64,000 nt of DNA from positions 84,196,001-84,260,000 of the forward strand of contig NW_027361696.1 in the NCBI RefSeq assembly GCF_039654945.1. Reading direction: 5' to 3'. Origin of the DNA: Dendrobates tinctorius. Lineage: Eukaryota. Positions within the stretch are counted from its first letter, which is position 1. The number at the start of each line of letters is the position of its first letter. The translations under genes and the position numbers were made by a program. The notes beneath the pieces were generated by a model. That model was not told where the DNA came from, searched no databases, and saw only the letters and a list, made by a program, of their open reading frames with translations. This document shows positions 21,310 through 42,821 of the stretch, piece by piece.

Positions 21310-21510
21310 CTCCACTGAATAATGCAGTGCAGAAGACGCAGGGTGAAGGGAAAGATTTTGGAAGGGCTTTATGAGAGGCTTTCCCCAGCCGTTCTCGTTG
21401 GTCCACTCTATGGTCAACATATGGTCGGTGAATGTTTTCCCAAACACCAACTCGGATACAGCCGGCTTCTTTTTAGGCTGTTTGTTCAATTCTACTTGGA
21501 GGTCTGTGGA
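21310..21510 (-). CDS. BCAT2: BCAT2 exon ([32 protein letters not shown]...[12 protein letters not shown])
   Basis: [12 protein letters not shown] and [16 protein letters not shown] are BCAT motifs. cttcag| acceptor, GAG|GTAAGG donor, 201 nt. Confidence 0.97.
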
Positions 21511-21986: not shown

Positions 21987-22064
21987 CTTAAACGTTGTGC
22001 TTGCAGCTCTCCATGAGATAATAGGCCAGCGGCGCTGAGCTGACATTAATTGTCTGCCAAAAAC
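21987..22064 (-). CDS. BCAT2: BCAT2 exon encoding the mitochondrial presequence (VFGRQLMSAQRRWPIISWRAASTTFK)
   Basis: ctttag| acceptor, AAG|GTAAGG donor, 78 nt, phase 0. The peptide is Arg-rich with no acidic residues and ends in FK, as in BCAT2. Confidence 0.9.
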
Positions 22065-27100: not shown

Positions 27101-27780
27101 ACCTTCAGCAGCACTAAGGCTGCATTCTGTGAAGGTGGCTCTTCCGTTTCTGACCCCCAGTAACGCCGAAATATTAACTTTTATAAATAGGCCCTTATAC
27201 CTGTTATGGGTCCCATAGGTATGGAGCCTCCCCCTGAAGCAGCCGCCTCCCCGCCATCAATCATGTCTGTGCAGCGTCTGGGCCCCGCCTCCCATAGCCA
27301 TCCATCATGCTCCTGTGCTGCTGTCTGTGCCCCGCCTCCATCTGTCTCCTATGGCGGCGCCTGCTCTGTGAAAACAGATCCTGCCCCGCACTGTGAATCA
27401 TCATAACACACACTACGGGGCAGGATCTGAGGCCTCCACAACACGCAGGCGTGATCGCCTGATGTCAGTTCACGGGCAGCGCCCACTGCGCATGCCTGAG
27501 AACTGGTTTTTTTTCAGCAATTGAAAAATACAAAGAATGTTAAAAAATAGTACCATTTGTTTATAATTTAGTAAAATATGAAAAATAATTTTAAAAAGTT
27601 TGGTATTTCCACTTTTAAACACTAGGGGGAGCAGCTACTGAAATTTGACACAAAAACCTAGTGTACAACTAGCTCACATTACTGCCCTGCAGTAAATATG
27701 GGCTGAATCTGCTCACATGCGTGTGATATCACTCCTCTCCTTCTGGGTGTTTGCTAAAGGATAAGAGAGGATGATATTTA

Positions 27781-27963
27781 GGCTGGGGTCACACTTGTGA
27801 GTGCAATGTGAGAAACTCGCATCAATACCCGGCCCTGCTGCCGGCCCTCAGGACCGGAGTGTGCCGCTGCATGCATTTCCAAACTGCCGGGGGCAGTGCT
27901 GGGTATTGATGCGAGAGACTCGCATGAGTTTCTCGCATTGCACTTGCAAGTGTGCCCCCTGCC
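27781..27963. mobile_element. Harbinger-type MITE
   Basis: TTA TSD on both sides; GGCTGGGGTCACACTTG and CAAGTGTGCCCCCTGCC TIRs. Confidence 0.75.
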
Positions 27964-28101
27964 TTAGGAACAGTGTGGAGCCATTTTGTTGGTGACAAGT
28001 TATACTGACAAGTAGATGATCACCGAGGAAGGCAGGCAGAAAGGATTCTGTTAGTTGGTGCTGCTCGCTGTATCATGCTCACATGCTGACGCTAACACCC
28101 A

Positions 28102-28560
28102 GGCCAGGATCACACATGCGAGAATCTCGAACGAGTCTCCCATCTTAATACCCGGCACTGCCACTGGCACTTGGGAGCGGAGCGTGCAGCTGCATAGAAA
28201 GAAGTATCATTTCTCCTTGCGGAGAATGACATGCTAAGCATGTCGAGGTGAGGAGACTTAAAGCTGCAATGCTCCTCTGGAAAATATGCTAATTATGCAA
28301 ATTGTCTCTTCAGAGAGGAAGAGGACTAGAACTCTAGTGCCACCTATTGGAGGTAGCAATCCTAAAAGTCAATGTCGACCCTCTAACAAGCCTAGTTAAG
28401 TGACTTAGGATAAAAGCCAAGCCAGAATCTCCATTTGCAGACACTGTGTTTCGGGGTACTGCCCCTCATCAGTGCAAAGTGGGAGATCTGGTTTGGCACG
28501 CTCCGCTCCGGGTATTAAATGCGAGACTAGTCTGAGTTTCTCGCATGTGTGATCCCAGCC
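28102..28560. mobile_element. Harbinger-type MITE interrupted by a ~300-nt ribozyme-bearing unit
   Basis: GGCCAGGATCACACATGCGAGAA and TTCTCGCATGTGTGATCCCAGCC TIRs. Foreign insert at about 28200-28497. Confidence 0.75.
28416..28497 (-). ncRNA. Type I hammerhead ribozyme with canonical core, in a retrozyme/satellite-2-like unit
   Basis: Minus strand: GCCAAACCAGATCTCCCAC-TTTGCA-CTGATGA-GGGG-CAGTA-CCCC-GAAA-CACAGTG-TC-TGCAAA-TGGAGATTCTGGCTTGGC. All core nucleotides and stems are present. The predicted cut is GUC|, between 28440 and 28439. Confidence 0.9.
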
Positions 28561-29842
28561 TAACACTCACACAAGGAGGAATCTGAAATATTCCCCTCCA
28601 AAAAAAGACTCCTTGCGCATATTGCCCTGTCAGGAAAACTCATGCCCACTGTGTTTTAGGTCCTGTTCCTAGATGCGGCTACACGGTGTTTTTGTTTTTT
28701 TTTCCTGCAGGTGTCCGCACCAAAATAAACAATAGTAATCTGCCCTGATATTTTCATTTTTGTTGATTTTATTTTTTAAGCATCTCCCCCATTCTTAGAT
28801 TTTTGCGGTGGATGTGACACAGAAGCATTACTTTAGCGCGGGGATTGCTTGAATTCTGCCCTTAGACATGCATTTGCTCCCTATTAAAAGCTATAAGAAA
28901 AAAAAAAGCACGTGGAAAAAAATACACAATGCTGCAGCGTCTCTAAATGCAGAACGGGTAGGAATTTTCATGAAATCACTTCGTTTTTTCGGGTAAATGC
29001 AGCAGATTTGCTTTTCAAAAAAATGCAGGAGGGGAAAAAAAAACATAACGTTTACCCTGCAGACACAGCTTGCATTTTCGGTCATTTTTTTCTCTATGGG
29101 CTTCTATGCTATTTTTTTAAAAAATAGATGTAAAAAAATATATATTTTTTTAAGTGCAGAATTCCAGTGTTTTTGCACTAAAAGTGCACTTAAAATAAAA
29201 ATAACTGCACCAAAAGCACGCAAAAAAGGGAGAAAATGCTATCAAAAGTTGGAATAATCAAAGCAGATTGTTATAACGTATTTTAAAGGAGATGCCGTAG
29301 CAAAAAAACAAATAAAAACAAAAGTTTCCACACCGGGAACATGGGCAGAAAGAGACCAGTGACTGGAGGAGAGAACAAGGGTGCTTTGCTACACTACTAT
29401 GTTGTGTGGGATGCAGGTGTTGGAGCGTGTTCAGGTGTCCCCACCTTACCTGGATGGTGGGGTACCACACCTCAGGAGGAGGTGCAGTACTTCTGTGGTG
29501 ACTGAACCCTCAGGGGCGCCACATATATGTGTGTCTGTCTCCTCATTGCACTTCAGAGCACATGTTGACTGTCGACACCATTATAGTTTATAGCATGCGC
29601 CTGAATCCCGTTTTGTGGAGGGCTCAGCCGTAAGCCTGACGGGACCAATGAACGCATGACAAAAAGCAGTGAGAAAGCAGATCTGGAGCAATCAGCCAGC
29701 TTTCTTTTAACAAAGGGTTGTCTTGGTGAGGATGATTGCCATCAGTCATCTACCATTAGGTCCACCACCATCACATACTCCACTGCACGATCCTATTGTT
29801 GAGAGAAACTGGTATAACAGGTAAAACAAAACCCAAACCTAA

Positions 29843-39759: not shown

Positions 39760-40180
39760 TACACATCACTATGGCTGTACTATATACATACCGCTGTCTA
39801 CACAACACTATGGCTGTATACTATATACCGCTGTCTACACATCACTATGGCTGTATACTATATACCGCTGTCTACACATCACTATGGCTGTATACTATAT
39901 ACCGCTGTCTACACATCACTATGGCTGTATACTATATACCGCTGTCTACACATCACTATGGCTGTATACTATATACCGCTGTCTACACATCACTATGGCT
40001 GTATACTATATACCGCTGTCTACACATCACTATGGCTGTATACTATATACCGCTGTCTACACATCACTATGGCTGTATACTATATACCGCTGTCTACACA
40101 TCACTATGGCTGTATACTATATACCGCTGTATACACATCACTATGGCTGTATACTATATACACGTCACTATGGCTGTATG
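39760..40180. repeat. 37-bp minisatellite, about 11 copies
   Basis: Unit ACACATCACTATGGCTGTATACTATATACCGCTGTCT. Confidence 0.95.
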
Positions 40181-41530: not shown

Positions 41531-42560
41531 GTATACACATCACTATGGCTGTACACTACATATCGCTGTATACACAGCACTATGGCTGTACACTATATAC
41601 CGCTGTATACACAGCACTATGGCTGTACACTATATACCTCTGTATACACAGCACTATGGCTGTAACTACATACCTCTGTATACACAGCACTATGGCTGTA
41701 CGCTACATACCTCTGTATACACAGCACTATGGCTGTAACTACATACCTCTGTATACACAGCACTATGGCTGTACGCTACATACCTCTGTATACACAGCAC
41801 TACGGCTGTACACTATATACCTCTGTATACACAGCACTACGGCTGTACGCTACATACCTCTGTATACACAGCACTACGGCTGTACGCTACATACCTCTGT
41901 ATACACAGCACTACGGCTGTACGCTACATACCGCTGTATACACAGCACTACGGCTGTACGCTACATACCGCTGTATACACAGCACTACGGCTGTACGCTA
42001 CATACCTCTGTATACACAGCACTACGGCTGTACGCTACATACCTCTGTATACACAGCAATATGGCTGTACGCTACATACCTCTGTATACACAGCAATATG
42101 GCTGTACGCTACATACCTCTGTATACACAGCAATACGGCTGTACGCTACATACCTCTGTATACACAGCACTACGGCTGTACGCTACATACCTCTGTATAC
42201 ACAGCACTACGGCTGTACGCTACATACCTCTGTATACACAGCACTACGGCTGTACGCTACATACCTCTGTATACACAGCACTACGGCTGTACGCTACATA
42301 CCTCTGTATACACAGCACTACGGCTGTACGCTACATACCTCTGTATACACAGCACTACGGCTGTACGCTACATACCGCTGTATACACAGCAATATGGCTG
42401 TACGCTACATACCTCTGTATACACAGCACTACGGCTGTACGCTACATACCTCTGTATACACAGCAATATGGCTGTACACTATATACCTCTGTATACACAG
42501 CAATATGGCTGTACGCTATATACCTCTGTATACACAGCACTATGGCTGTACGCTATCTAC
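41531..42560. repeat. 37-bp minisatellite, about 28 copies
   Basis: Unit TATACACAGCACTACGGCTGTACGCTACATACCTCTG. Confidence 0.95.
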
Positions 42561-42788: not shown

Positions 42789-42821
42789 CTTCCCCCCGGA
42801 TAAACCTGCCCCGGCTGCCAT
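42789..42821 (-). CDS. BCAT2: BCAT2 first coding exon (MAAGAGLSGGK); the exon probably extends as 5'UTR to an acceptor at 42896
   Basis: Minus strand reads ctgaccATGG (good Kozak), 11 codons, then AAG|GTGAGT donor in phase 0. This joins in frame to the 22064 exon. The region is CpG-rich and resembles the short MAAA- first exon of vertebrate BCAT2. Confidence 0.75.

What the first reader, a model, noticed from the sequence alone, without database searches (positions are those of the whole stretch)
28200..28497. Intact hammerhead ribozyme in a retrozyme-like unit on the sense strand of a BCAT2 intron
Seen: a ~300-nt unit interrupts a Harbinger MITE. Its minus strand has a complete hammerhead core (CUGAUGA, GAAA, GUC), a 4-bp stem II and a long bulged stem I. 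Stem III has only a 1-nt loop (ACAC-A-GUGU). The unit also has tandem octamer-like motifs (ATGCTAAT 28286, ATGCAAAT 28295) and a CTCF-like motif (TGCCACCTATTGG 28338-28350). Known: newt satellite 2 and non-LTR retrozymes are small ribozyme units with snRNA-like octamer promoter elements, they yield circular RNAs, and their unstable stem III favours dimeric cleavage. Inference: this is a dispersed monomer of such a family, and it is transcribed within the BCAT2 pre-mRNA. The intron could be cleaved in cis, or by pairing with abundant retrozyme RNA in trans.
Basis: partly seen in the sequence, partly recalled or inferred. Interest (0 to 1): 0.78.

Follow-up and report, generated by a model that had tools for sequence, protein, structure and literature searches.

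The report
Solo frog hammerhead retrozyme copy in intron
This is one stray, nearly complete copy of a very abundant frog jumping repeat that carries a small self-cutting RNA motif (hammerhead); it sits in the first intron of a BCAT2-like gene and is an ordinary example of a kind already described in amphibians.

Summary
The minus strand at 28497-28415 carries a complete type I hammerhead. All core bases are present, helix II has 4 bp, and helix I has 6 bp followed by an internal loop and a long closing stem. Helix III is the palindrome ACAC-A-GUGU, and the predicted cut lies at 28440|28439. My descriptor finds this one site in the window and none in 300 shuffles. Rfam does not call it (best 13.6 bits, RAGATH-1 hammerhead).

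Public contigs show that 28199-28497 belongs to a hugely repeated family. Summed word depth is 1.5-5.6e5, against about 7 in the unique flank. The family also occurs in a run under another organism label and in possible RNA runs. One head-to-tail joint gives a unit of about 326 nt, so this copy is a 299-nt monomer that lacks 27 nt. It sits in the centre of a palindromic MITE, with about 11 nt of target lost and no TSD.

The BCAT gene is on the minus strand. I found a missed exon 2 (22064-21987), so the unit lies in intron 1 on the sense strand. As a lone monomer the fold hides the core, and only two copies form the active double hammerhead, so cutting of the pre-mRNA is probably weak. The scan has noted this kind of element many times in this genome, including a 326-nt unit. 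The finding is ordinary.

The parts
28199..28497 (-). Solo copy (299 of about 326 nt) of an abundant hammerhead-bearing non-coding repeat (non-LTR retrozyme or PLE-derived). Its 5' end is at 28497 and its 3' end at about 28199-28201, read on the minus strand.
   Evidence: summed word depth is 1.5e5-5.6e5 over this span, against 6.8 in the unique flank 28602-28900. Loose ends behind 28497 share a consensus, so the family runs on where this copy stops. A joint 28497->28199 with 27 letters between is a head-to-tail arrangement; the fold z-score is -4.7.
28415..28497 (-). Type I hammerhead with its full helix I closing stem.
28466..28472 (-). Core bases C3-U4-G5-A6-U7-G8-A9.
   Evidence: and the alignment.
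28453..28465 (-). Helix II (GGGG/CCCC, with the G10.1-C11.1 pair) and loop 2 (CAGUA).
28441..28452 (-). G12-A13-A14 followed by the palindromic helix III, ACAC-A-GUGU. It is too short to be stable alone. Two copies pair into an 8-bp helix with a central A.A mismatch.
   Evidence: the cofold of two copies (-76.0 kcal/mol) forms the extended helix III.
28439..28440 (-). Predicted cleavage site, after C17 (28440) and before U1.1 (28439).
   Evidence: Position deduced from the core numbering. Not tested.
28286..28302 (+). Two octamer-like motifs (ATGCTAAT, ATGCAAAT). In this copy they lie 3' of the ribozyme on the RNA strand.
   Evidence: not above chance in the window; many family copies stop matching at about 28290-28298, which marks a subfamily or module boundary.
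28337..28350 (-). CTCF-like motif, inside the most deeply covered part of the repeat (28315-28355).
   Evidence: 1 mismatch to the consensus, with 1.3 such matches expected per window; the depth peak falls here.
28099..28200 (.). Left arm of the interrupted palindromic MITE.
   Evidence: other copies of the MITE continue after 28195/28200 with the MITE centre instead of the unit.
28498..28565 (.). Right arm of the interrupted MITE. About 11 nt of the MITE centre are missing at the junction, and there is no target-site duplication.
   Evidence: (I2, I10), and the loose ends and table 5c.
42789..42821 (-). Candidate coding part of BCAT2-like exon 1: an ATG, 11 codons, then a GTGAGT donor.
   Evidence: It is in frame with the 18-nt leader and the ATG of exon 2. 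It is too short for a homology test.
21987..22064 (-). It has a pyrimidine tract and AG acceptor, an ATG at 22046, a 20-codon arginine-rich, acid-free peptide ending in FK, and a GTAAGG donor.
21310..21510 (-). BCAT2-like exon 3.
   Evidence: the best solved-structure match is human mitochondrial BCAT (E 8e-25, 89 bits), against 80 bits for the cytosolic enzyme.

Best explanation
The stretch 28199-28497, read on the minus strand, is one solo copy of a very abundant non-coding frog repeat. It is slightly 5'-truncated, holding 299 of about 326 nt. Each unit of the repeat carries a type I hammerhead. The repeat is therefore an amphibian non-LTR retrozyme, a class now thought to derive from the terminal repeats of Penelope-like elements.

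The copy landed in the central loop of a palindromic MITE inside intron 1 of a BCAT2-like gene, in the same orientation as the gene. I infer the following about how it works. In tandem arrays or multimeric transcripts, two neighbouring ribozymes pair their palindromic helix III strands into a double hammerhead. They cut after C17 and release unit-length RNAs, which can be circularised and reverse-transcribed.

This copy has an uncut ribozyme and ends that do not coincide with the cleavage site. It was therefore copied from an uncleaved multimer or a circle, not from a self-cleaved linear monomer. As a lone monomer within the pre-mRNA it is expected to fold mainly into an inactive hairpin and to cut slowly or not at all. 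It is most likely a neutral intronic passenger.
For: Shown:
- The core and all three helices are complete.
- The motif is unique in the window and absent from 300 shuffles.
- The architecture matches the 'canonical' metazoan type I hammerhead described in PMC4209133: helix I of 6 bp, helix II of 4 bp, and a short palindromic helix III.
- The span is massively repeated in DNA contigs of organism A and in a run under another organism label (organism B), and it is present in the possible RNA runs.
- In the printed part, the only hammerhead position at which most contigs differ from this copy is 28432, in helix I. A further 97 variable positions were not printed.
- The family continues beyond 28497 in other copies, and one contig shows a head-to-tail joint with 27 extra letters. 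That gives a unit of about 326 nt. This is near the amphibian mean of 316 bp and the 330-350 nt of newt and axolotl units.
- Other copies of the MITE continue with the MITE centre where the unit starts, so the unit is an insert.
- The monomer's lowest-energy fold (-36.3 kcal/mol) pairs A2.1-C3-U4-G5 (ACUG) with the CAGU of helix III. The active fold is 3.5-3.9 kcal/mol worse. Two copies cofold into the double hammerhead (-76.0 against 2 x -36.3).
- BCAT exons lie on the minus strand below 22.1 kb, and exon 2 has an acceptor site, so an upstream exon must exist. The in-frame candidate lies at 42.8 kb.

Literature:
- Amphibian hammerheads cleave poorly as monomers and well as dimers (PMC7229834).
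- In Xenopus about 43% of retrozyme copies are intronic, monomer derivatives are common, and only 1 of 9 dimers cleaved in vitro (bioRxiv 10.64898/2026.07.22.740005).
Against: - Rfam does not recognise the motif. There is no Hammerhead_1 hit even at E up to 10, and the best hit is 13.6 bits to RAGATH-1-hammerhead.
- I could not fetch a single other copy as sequence. Family conservation of the core therefore rests on the summary tables, where 97 variable positions were not shown.
- Contig depth is not a copy number.
- The copy has no target-site duplication and no tail. Retrotransposition is therefore inferred from the family, not shown at this site.
- The tandem unit length comes from one contig joint, in a run under another organism label.
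- The helix III palindrome has an odd central A, so the dimer helix carries an A.A mismatch.
- Exon 1 at 42.8 kb has only 11 codons and is not verified by homology or RNA.
Confidence: 0.85

Rival explanations
1. It is the terminal repeat (pLTR) remnant of a heavily 5'-truncated autonomous Penelope-like element, not a copy of a non-autonomous retrozyme.
For: PLE terminal repeats carry type I or minimal hammerheads. Most PLE insertions are 5'-truncated to a single terminal repeat, and Xenopus retrozyme families sit next to PLE pLTRs in trees. This copy is 5'-truncated.
Against: PLE 'min-HHRs' typically have a longer helix II (6-8 bp), a short helix I and no helix III. This one has the canonical 6-bp/4-bp architecture of retrozyme and satellite hammerheads. 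A head-to-tail joint with a unit of about 326 nt is the retrozyme arrangement. No reverse transcriptase or GIY-YIG reading frame adjoins it. The two readings overlap and cannot be fully separated without the genome.
Confidence: 0.1
2. It is a working intronic ribozyme that cuts the BCAT2 pre-mRNA, alone or paired in trans with abundant retrozyme RNA, and so tunes the gene's output.
For: It is on the sense strand, the core is intact and helix I is long and stable. Family RNA may be present in cells: contigs in runs guessed to be RNA hold the family. A trans dimer through helix III is thermodynamically allowed.
Against: The monomer fold hides the core. No second hammerhead lies within 64 kb. Amphibian monomers cleave at 6-22% per hour in vitro, and 8 of 9 Xenopus dimers did not cleave at all. 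The copy looks like a random insertion inside another transposon. Nothing here suggests conservation of this site. From my own knowledge (Dye et al. 2006; Fong et al. 2009), only fast-cleaving ribozymes placed in introns disturb splicing.
Confidence: 0.03
3. The 300 nt are not an insert but the native internal region of a longer Harbinger-type non-autonomous element. The hammerhead would then belong to a DNA transposon.
For: The unit is flanked by perfectly complementary 14-nt MITE segments (28174-87 / 28496-509), and no target-site duplication is visible.
Against: Other MITE copies continue past 28195/28200 with a short MITE centre and then the complementary arm (loose ends and table 5c). The neighbouring MITE copy has no such insert. 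Contigs hold the unit with unrelated flanks, and its depth is about 4 times that of the MITE arms.
Confidence: 0.02

Closest known systems
Amphibian non-LTR retrozymes / newt satellite 2 (axolotl Rtz331 and Rtz353; Xenopus retrozyme families)
   Same: The unit is about 326 nt, non-coding and highly self-paired. It carries a type I hammerhead with 6-bp helix I, 4-bp helix II and a weak palindromic helix III that calls for a dimer. Abundance is huge, head-to-tail copies exist, and dispersed monomers are often intronic.
   Different: Sequence identity to any published family was not tested, because no frog repeat library is at hand. Helix III here is a 9-nt palindrome with an unpaired central A, not a 1-2 bp stem with an even tetraloop. 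This copy is a solo monomer without a TSD. Circles and cleavage were not tested.
Penelope-like element terminal repeats with minimal hammerheads (Cervera & de la Pena 2014)
   Same: Both are hammerheads in a retroelement that are thought to act as dimers. Insertions are 5'-truncated. These repeats are the probable evolutionary source of animal retrozymes.
   Different: PLE min-HHRs have a long helix II, a short helix I and no helix III. No PLE reading frame adjoins this copy.
Conserved intronic hammerheads of amniotes (HH9, HH10; De la Pena & Garcia-Robles 2010)
   Same: Both are hammerheads on the sense strand of an intron of a protein-coding gene.
   Different: Those are single-copy, ultraconserved, stable monomeric ribozymes with their own Rfam models. 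This one is a copy of a repeat with tens of thousands of relatives, gets no Rfam hit, and shows no sign of site conservation.

Membership tests
Hammerhead ribozyme, type I | Conserved core C3-U4-G5-A6-N7-G8-A9, G12-A13-A14, the A15.1-U16.1 pair and H17 | tested here: met
   All are present on the minus strand at 28472-28440.
Hammerhead ribozyme, type I | Three helices around the core, with helix I open-ended | tested here: met
   Helix I has 6 bp plus a closing stem, helix II has 4 bp, and helix III is closed by its own palindrome. There were 0 hits in 300 shuffles.
Hammerhead ribozyme, type I | Recognised by the curated covariance models (Rfam Hammerhead_1 and relatives) | tested here: not met
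   There is no gathering hit. The only hit is RAGATH-1-hammerhead at 13.6 bits, E 3.9.
Hammerhead ribozyme, type I | Self-cleavage after position 17 | not testable with these tools
   This needs in vitro transcription of monomer and dimer. The folds predict an inactive monomer and an active-shaped dimer.
Metazoan non-LTR retrozyme | Small (about 170-400 nt) non-coding unit with one type I hammerhead | tested here: met
   The unit is about 326 nt (299 here plus 27 in the joint). It holds one hammerhead. No reading frame of 150 aa or more overlaps it.
Metazoan non-LTR retrozyme | Many genomic copies, with head-to-tail tandem arrangement in at least some | tested here: met
   about 25,000 contigs were laid on the 1.2-kb stretch (two MITE copies plus the unit), and depth is highest over the unit. 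One head-to-tail joint runs 28497->28199. Further 'goes back' joints were seen. The tandem evidence is thin (contigs only).
Metazoan non-LTR retrozyme | Target-site duplication of more than 4 bp at insertions | tested here: not met
   There is no direct repeat at 28199/28497. About 11 nt of the MITE centre are missing instead. The literature says 'when present', so this is not disqualifying.
Metazoan non-LTR retrozyme | Expressed as linear and circular unit-length RNAs | tested here: inconclusive
   Runs guessed to be RNA hold family contigs. The RNA label is a guess, contigs show no ends or circles, and the MITE is present in those runs as well.
Metazoan non-LTR retrozyme | Sequence homology to a published retrozyme or PLE pLTR consensus | not tested
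   No eukaryotic repeat library or frog genome search is available here.

The most novel reading that the evidence does not exclude
The family is not a passive passenger. Its most deeply covered segment (28274-28355) holds two octamer motifs and a near-consensus CTCF site. The repeat may therefore carry its own snRNA-type promoter, as shown for newt satellite 2. It may also have seeded thousands of octamer and CTCF-like sites across the frog genome. Abundant family RNA could pair through the helix III palindrome with solo sense-strand copies such as this one and cut host pre-mRNAs in trans.
Probability: 0.06. Interest if true: 0.7.

Novelty: new member of a known kind. Interest (0 to 1): 0.17.

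Why it matters
It matters little as a single locus. It is a clean, well-anchored example of a solo intronic retrozyme monomer with an intact hammerhead motif. It could serve as a test case for two questions: whether lone amphibian hammerheads cut host pre-mRNA at all, and whether retrozyme insertions are copied from uncleaved multimers or circles, since the ends of this copy do not coincide with the cleavage site. It also corrects the local gene model: the exon that most likely encodes the mitochondrial presequence lies at 22.0 kb. The class, its abundance in amphibians and its frequent intronic location are already published.

Tried and rejected
- Rfam at gathering and relaxed thresholds gave no usable hammerhead call.
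- A blastn search of the unit and the MITE against the window found no second copy of the unit and only two MITE copies.
- A pattern scan of metagenome contigs returned 116 loci, none of which holds the unit. They share only about 31 nt of hammerhead core with unrelated ribozymes.
- Scans of viral and prokaryote genome contigs with a hammerhead pattern and a core-segment pattern found 0 matches.
- The look-up of earlier findings by sequence was blank.
- An RNAalifold run on this hammerhead plus four metagenome hammerheads sharing the ACAC..GUGU helix III returned a non-hammerhead consensus. The alignment was out of register for helix II, so I dropped it.
- Three papers could not be opened: De la Pena & Garcia-Robles 2010 (RNA) by DOI and by a PMC id recalled from memory, and Coats et al. 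1994 by PMC id. The snRNA-type promoter of newt satellite 2 is therefore cited only through PMC2220036.
- All sequencing runs offered were contigs. No read ends, strand, circles or expression level could be read.
Exon 1 (11 codons) is too short to test by homology, and the in-frame reading across exons 1-2-3 was done by eye only.
- Rejected readings: a chance motif and a native MITE interior.

Full report
**What is in the sequence**

Read on the minus strand, 28497-28415 contains every element of a type I hammerhead.
- The core C3-U4-G5-A6-U7-G8-A9 lies at 28472-28466.
- Helix II is GGGG/CCCC with loop CAGUA (28465-28453) and includes the G10.1-C11.1 pair.
- G12-A13-A14 lies at 28452-28450.
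- Helix III is A15.1-C-A-C-[A]-G-U-G-U16.1 at 28449-28441.
- Helix I is UUUGCA/UGCAAA (6 bp). It is followed by an internal loop CAC/U and a further 15 pairs in three 5-bp blocks, reaching 28497/28416 (hairpin z-score -5.0).

I wrote a simple descriptor: helix I with at least 5 of 6 pairs, CUGANGA, a 4-bp helix II, GAAA, U16.1 and H17. It finds this one site on either strand of the 64-kb window and none in 300 dinucleotide-preserving shuffles. The motif is therefore real and not a chance match.

- Nothing reaches gathering score in the window.
- Nothing hammerhead-like appears at E up to 10 in 500 nt.
- In a 101-nt slice the only hit is RAGATH-1-hammerhead at 13.6 bits, E 3.9. Its alignment does trace helix I, the core, helix II, GAAAC and GUC.
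- I read this as a failure of the models on a 1-nt 'loop' in helix III and a very long helix I. It still counts against the claim.

**It is a copy of a very abundant repeat**

I could not search the frog genome itself. Public runs that hold the stretch were found, and their contigs were laid on 27700-28900 at 80% likeness or more.
- The unique flank 28602-28900 has a summed word depth of about 7 in the best DNA run.
- The two MITE copies have about 1e4-7e4.
- The span 28192-28497 has 1.5e5-5.6e5, from thousands of contigs.
- The same picture holds in a run of a second organism label and in two small runs that are guessed to be RNA.
- Depth of contigs is not a copy number, but the span is plainly a high-copy family.

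Three further details matter.
- First, 167 contigs in X1, and more in the other runs, continue beyond 28497 with a shared consensus where this locus switches to MITE sequence. This copy is therefore truncated at its 5' end on the minus strand.
- Second, one contig joins 28497 back to 28199 with 27 other letters between. That is a head-to-tail arrangement and gives a unit of 299 + 27 = about 326 nt. An unchecked first-reader note elsewhere in this genome (s1-369655) independently describes a 326-nt hammerhead retrozyme with octamer and CTCF-like sites.
- Third, in the printed part of the table the only hammerhead position where most contigs differ from this copy is 28432, in helix I. No core position is listed, although 97 variable positions were not printed.

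Many copies stop matching at about 28290-28298, so the family is modular or has subfamilies. Most copies also carry a different 7-nt block at 28394-28400.

**It is an insert in a MITE**

Inverted arms 28101-28143 / 28519-28561 and 28174-28187 / 28496-28509 flank the unit. A second, uninterrupted copy of the same palindromic MITE lies at 27781-27964, bounded by TTA on both sides. That repeat fits the 3-bp duplication of the Harbinger/PIF kind.

Other genomic copies of the MITE continue after 28195/28200 with a short centre followed directly by the complementary arm (loose ends and table 5c). The unit therefore entered the central loop of the MITE. About 11 nt of that centre are missing, the left junction is ambiguous by 2-5 nt of microhomology, and there is no target-site duplication.

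The ends of the copy lie about 57 nt upstream of the cleavage site and the ribozyme is uncut. The template was therefore an uncleaved multimer or a circle, not a self-cleaved linear monomer. This last point is my inference.

**Gene context**

BCAT-type exons lie on the minus strand. Exon 21510-21310 matches human mitochondrial BCAT best (E 8e-25, 89 bits, against 80 bits for the cytosolic enzyme).

- It has a pyrimidine tract and an AG acceptor.
- An 18-nt leader precedes an ATG at 22046.
- It encodes 20 arginine-rich, acid-free codons ending in FK. This looks like the mitochondrial presequence.
- It ends at a GTAAGG donor.

Because this exon has an acceptor, an upstream exon must exist. By eye it is in frame with the leader and the ATG of exon 2.

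With that caveat, the unit lies in intron 1 (42788-22065) on the sense strand, 14.3 kb from exon 1 and 6.4 kb from exon 2.

**How it most likely works**

PMC4209133 describes the canonical metazoan type I hammerhead as having helix I of 6 bp, helix II of 4 bp, and a very short helix III capped by a small palindromic loop. That helix III prevents efficient cutting by one copy but lets two copies form a double hammerhead. PMC7229834 shows the same for axolotl retrozymes of 331 and 353 nt: monomers cleave 6-22% in an hour, dimers cleave much better, and the RNAs accumulate as linear and circular monomers.

This motif fits that architecture, and the folding results agree.
- The monomer's minimum-energy fold (-36.3 kcal/mol) pairs A2.1-C3-U4-G5 (ACUG) with the CAGU of helix III.
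- The catalytically shaped fold is 3.5-3.9 kcal/mol worse.
- Two copies cofold into the double hammerhead with an 8-bp helix III carrying a central A.A mismatch (-76.0 against 2 x -36.3).
- The whole unit is strongly self-paired (z-score -4.7), as reported for retrozyme RNAs.

No second hammerhead lies in the 64-kb window, so no cis dimer can form in this pre-mRNA. Li, Clavereau and Pollet (bioRxiv 10.64898/2026.07.22.740005) report the following for Xenopus:
- 57 retrozyme families, with an amphibian mean consensus length of 316 bp;
- common monomer derivatives;
- about 43% of copies in introns;
- a close relationship to the terminal repeats of Penelope-like elements;
- cleavage in vitro by only 1 of 9 tested dimers.

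From my own knowledge (Dye et al. 2006; Fong et al. 2009), only fast-cleaving ribozymes placed in introns disturb splicing. I therefore expect this copy to be a neutral passenger. Cutting of the BCAT2 pre-mRNA, in cis or in trans, is possible in principle but unsupported.

**The promoter and CTCF claims**

The motifs are present. ATGCAAAT occurs 6 times in the window against 4 expected. A CTCF consensus match with one mismatch is expected 1.3 times per window. Their only claim to interest is that they sit in the most deeply covered segment of the family (28274-28355).

In this solo copy the octamers lie 3' of the ribozyme on the RNA strand, so they cannot drive its transcription. The snRNA-type promoter of newt satellite 2 is known (Coats et al. 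1994, cited through PMC2220036). A 2020 review states that metazoan retrozymes seem to lack promoters (PMC7761336).

**Verdict**

This is a dispersed, nearly full-length monomer of an abundant amphibian-type hammerhead retrozyme in an intron. The kind is published, and this scan has noted it many times in this genome: 529 notes mention hammerheads. That the genome is a frog's comes from those earlier notes; I did not verify the taxon.

Noticed in passing
window 21987-22064 (minus strand): An unreported BCAT2-like exon 2. It has a strong acceptor, an ATG at 22046, a 20-codon arginine-rich peptide ending in FK (a likely mitochondrial presequence) and a GTAAGG donor. It is in frame with the 11-codon ATG exon at 42821-42789, so the protein may start at either ATG.
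   Followed up: partly
window 27781-27964 and 28099-28565: Two copies of a palindromic MITE lie 130 bp apart. The first is bounded by TTA on both sides (Harbinger/PIF-like duplication). Contigs show the family's short centre in both orientations relative to the arms.
   Followed up: partly
window 28290-28298 and 28394-28400: Many family copies stop matching at about 28294, which marks a module or subfamily boundary within the octamer pair. Most copies carry a different 7-nt block (TGCCACA) at 28394-28400.
   Followed up: no
window 27700-28900 against runs X6, X8-X14, X17-X20: Runs under five other organism labels hold 10-19% of the sampled 31-letter words. The repeat, the MITE or both are therefore shared almost unchanged with other organisms. 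X6 also holds the unique flank 28683-28900 with 13 other letters and 8 gaps over about 220 bases, so it is a close relative or homeologue.
   Followed up: no
L046:80-389, L016:11652-12826 (metagenome contigs): These contigs hold tandem hammerheads 280 and 331 nt apart, with helix I closed by a loop and helix III open. They are retrozyme-like repeats of some unidentified eukaryote in environmental samples and share only the core with the frog unit.
   Followed up: no
L027:84-114, L111:910-940, L041:819-848, L056:481-510: These contigs hold type I hammerheads whose helix III is the perfect 8-nt palindrome ACACGUGU. That is the frog motif without its central A. Their helix II sequences differ from one another.
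   Followed up: partly
window 39760-40161 and 41531-42555: Two arrays of a 37-bp satellite (10.8 and 27.8 copies, 96-98% matches) lie in intron 1, just downstream of the candidate exon 1. They create long spurious reading frames on the plus strand.
   Followed up: no
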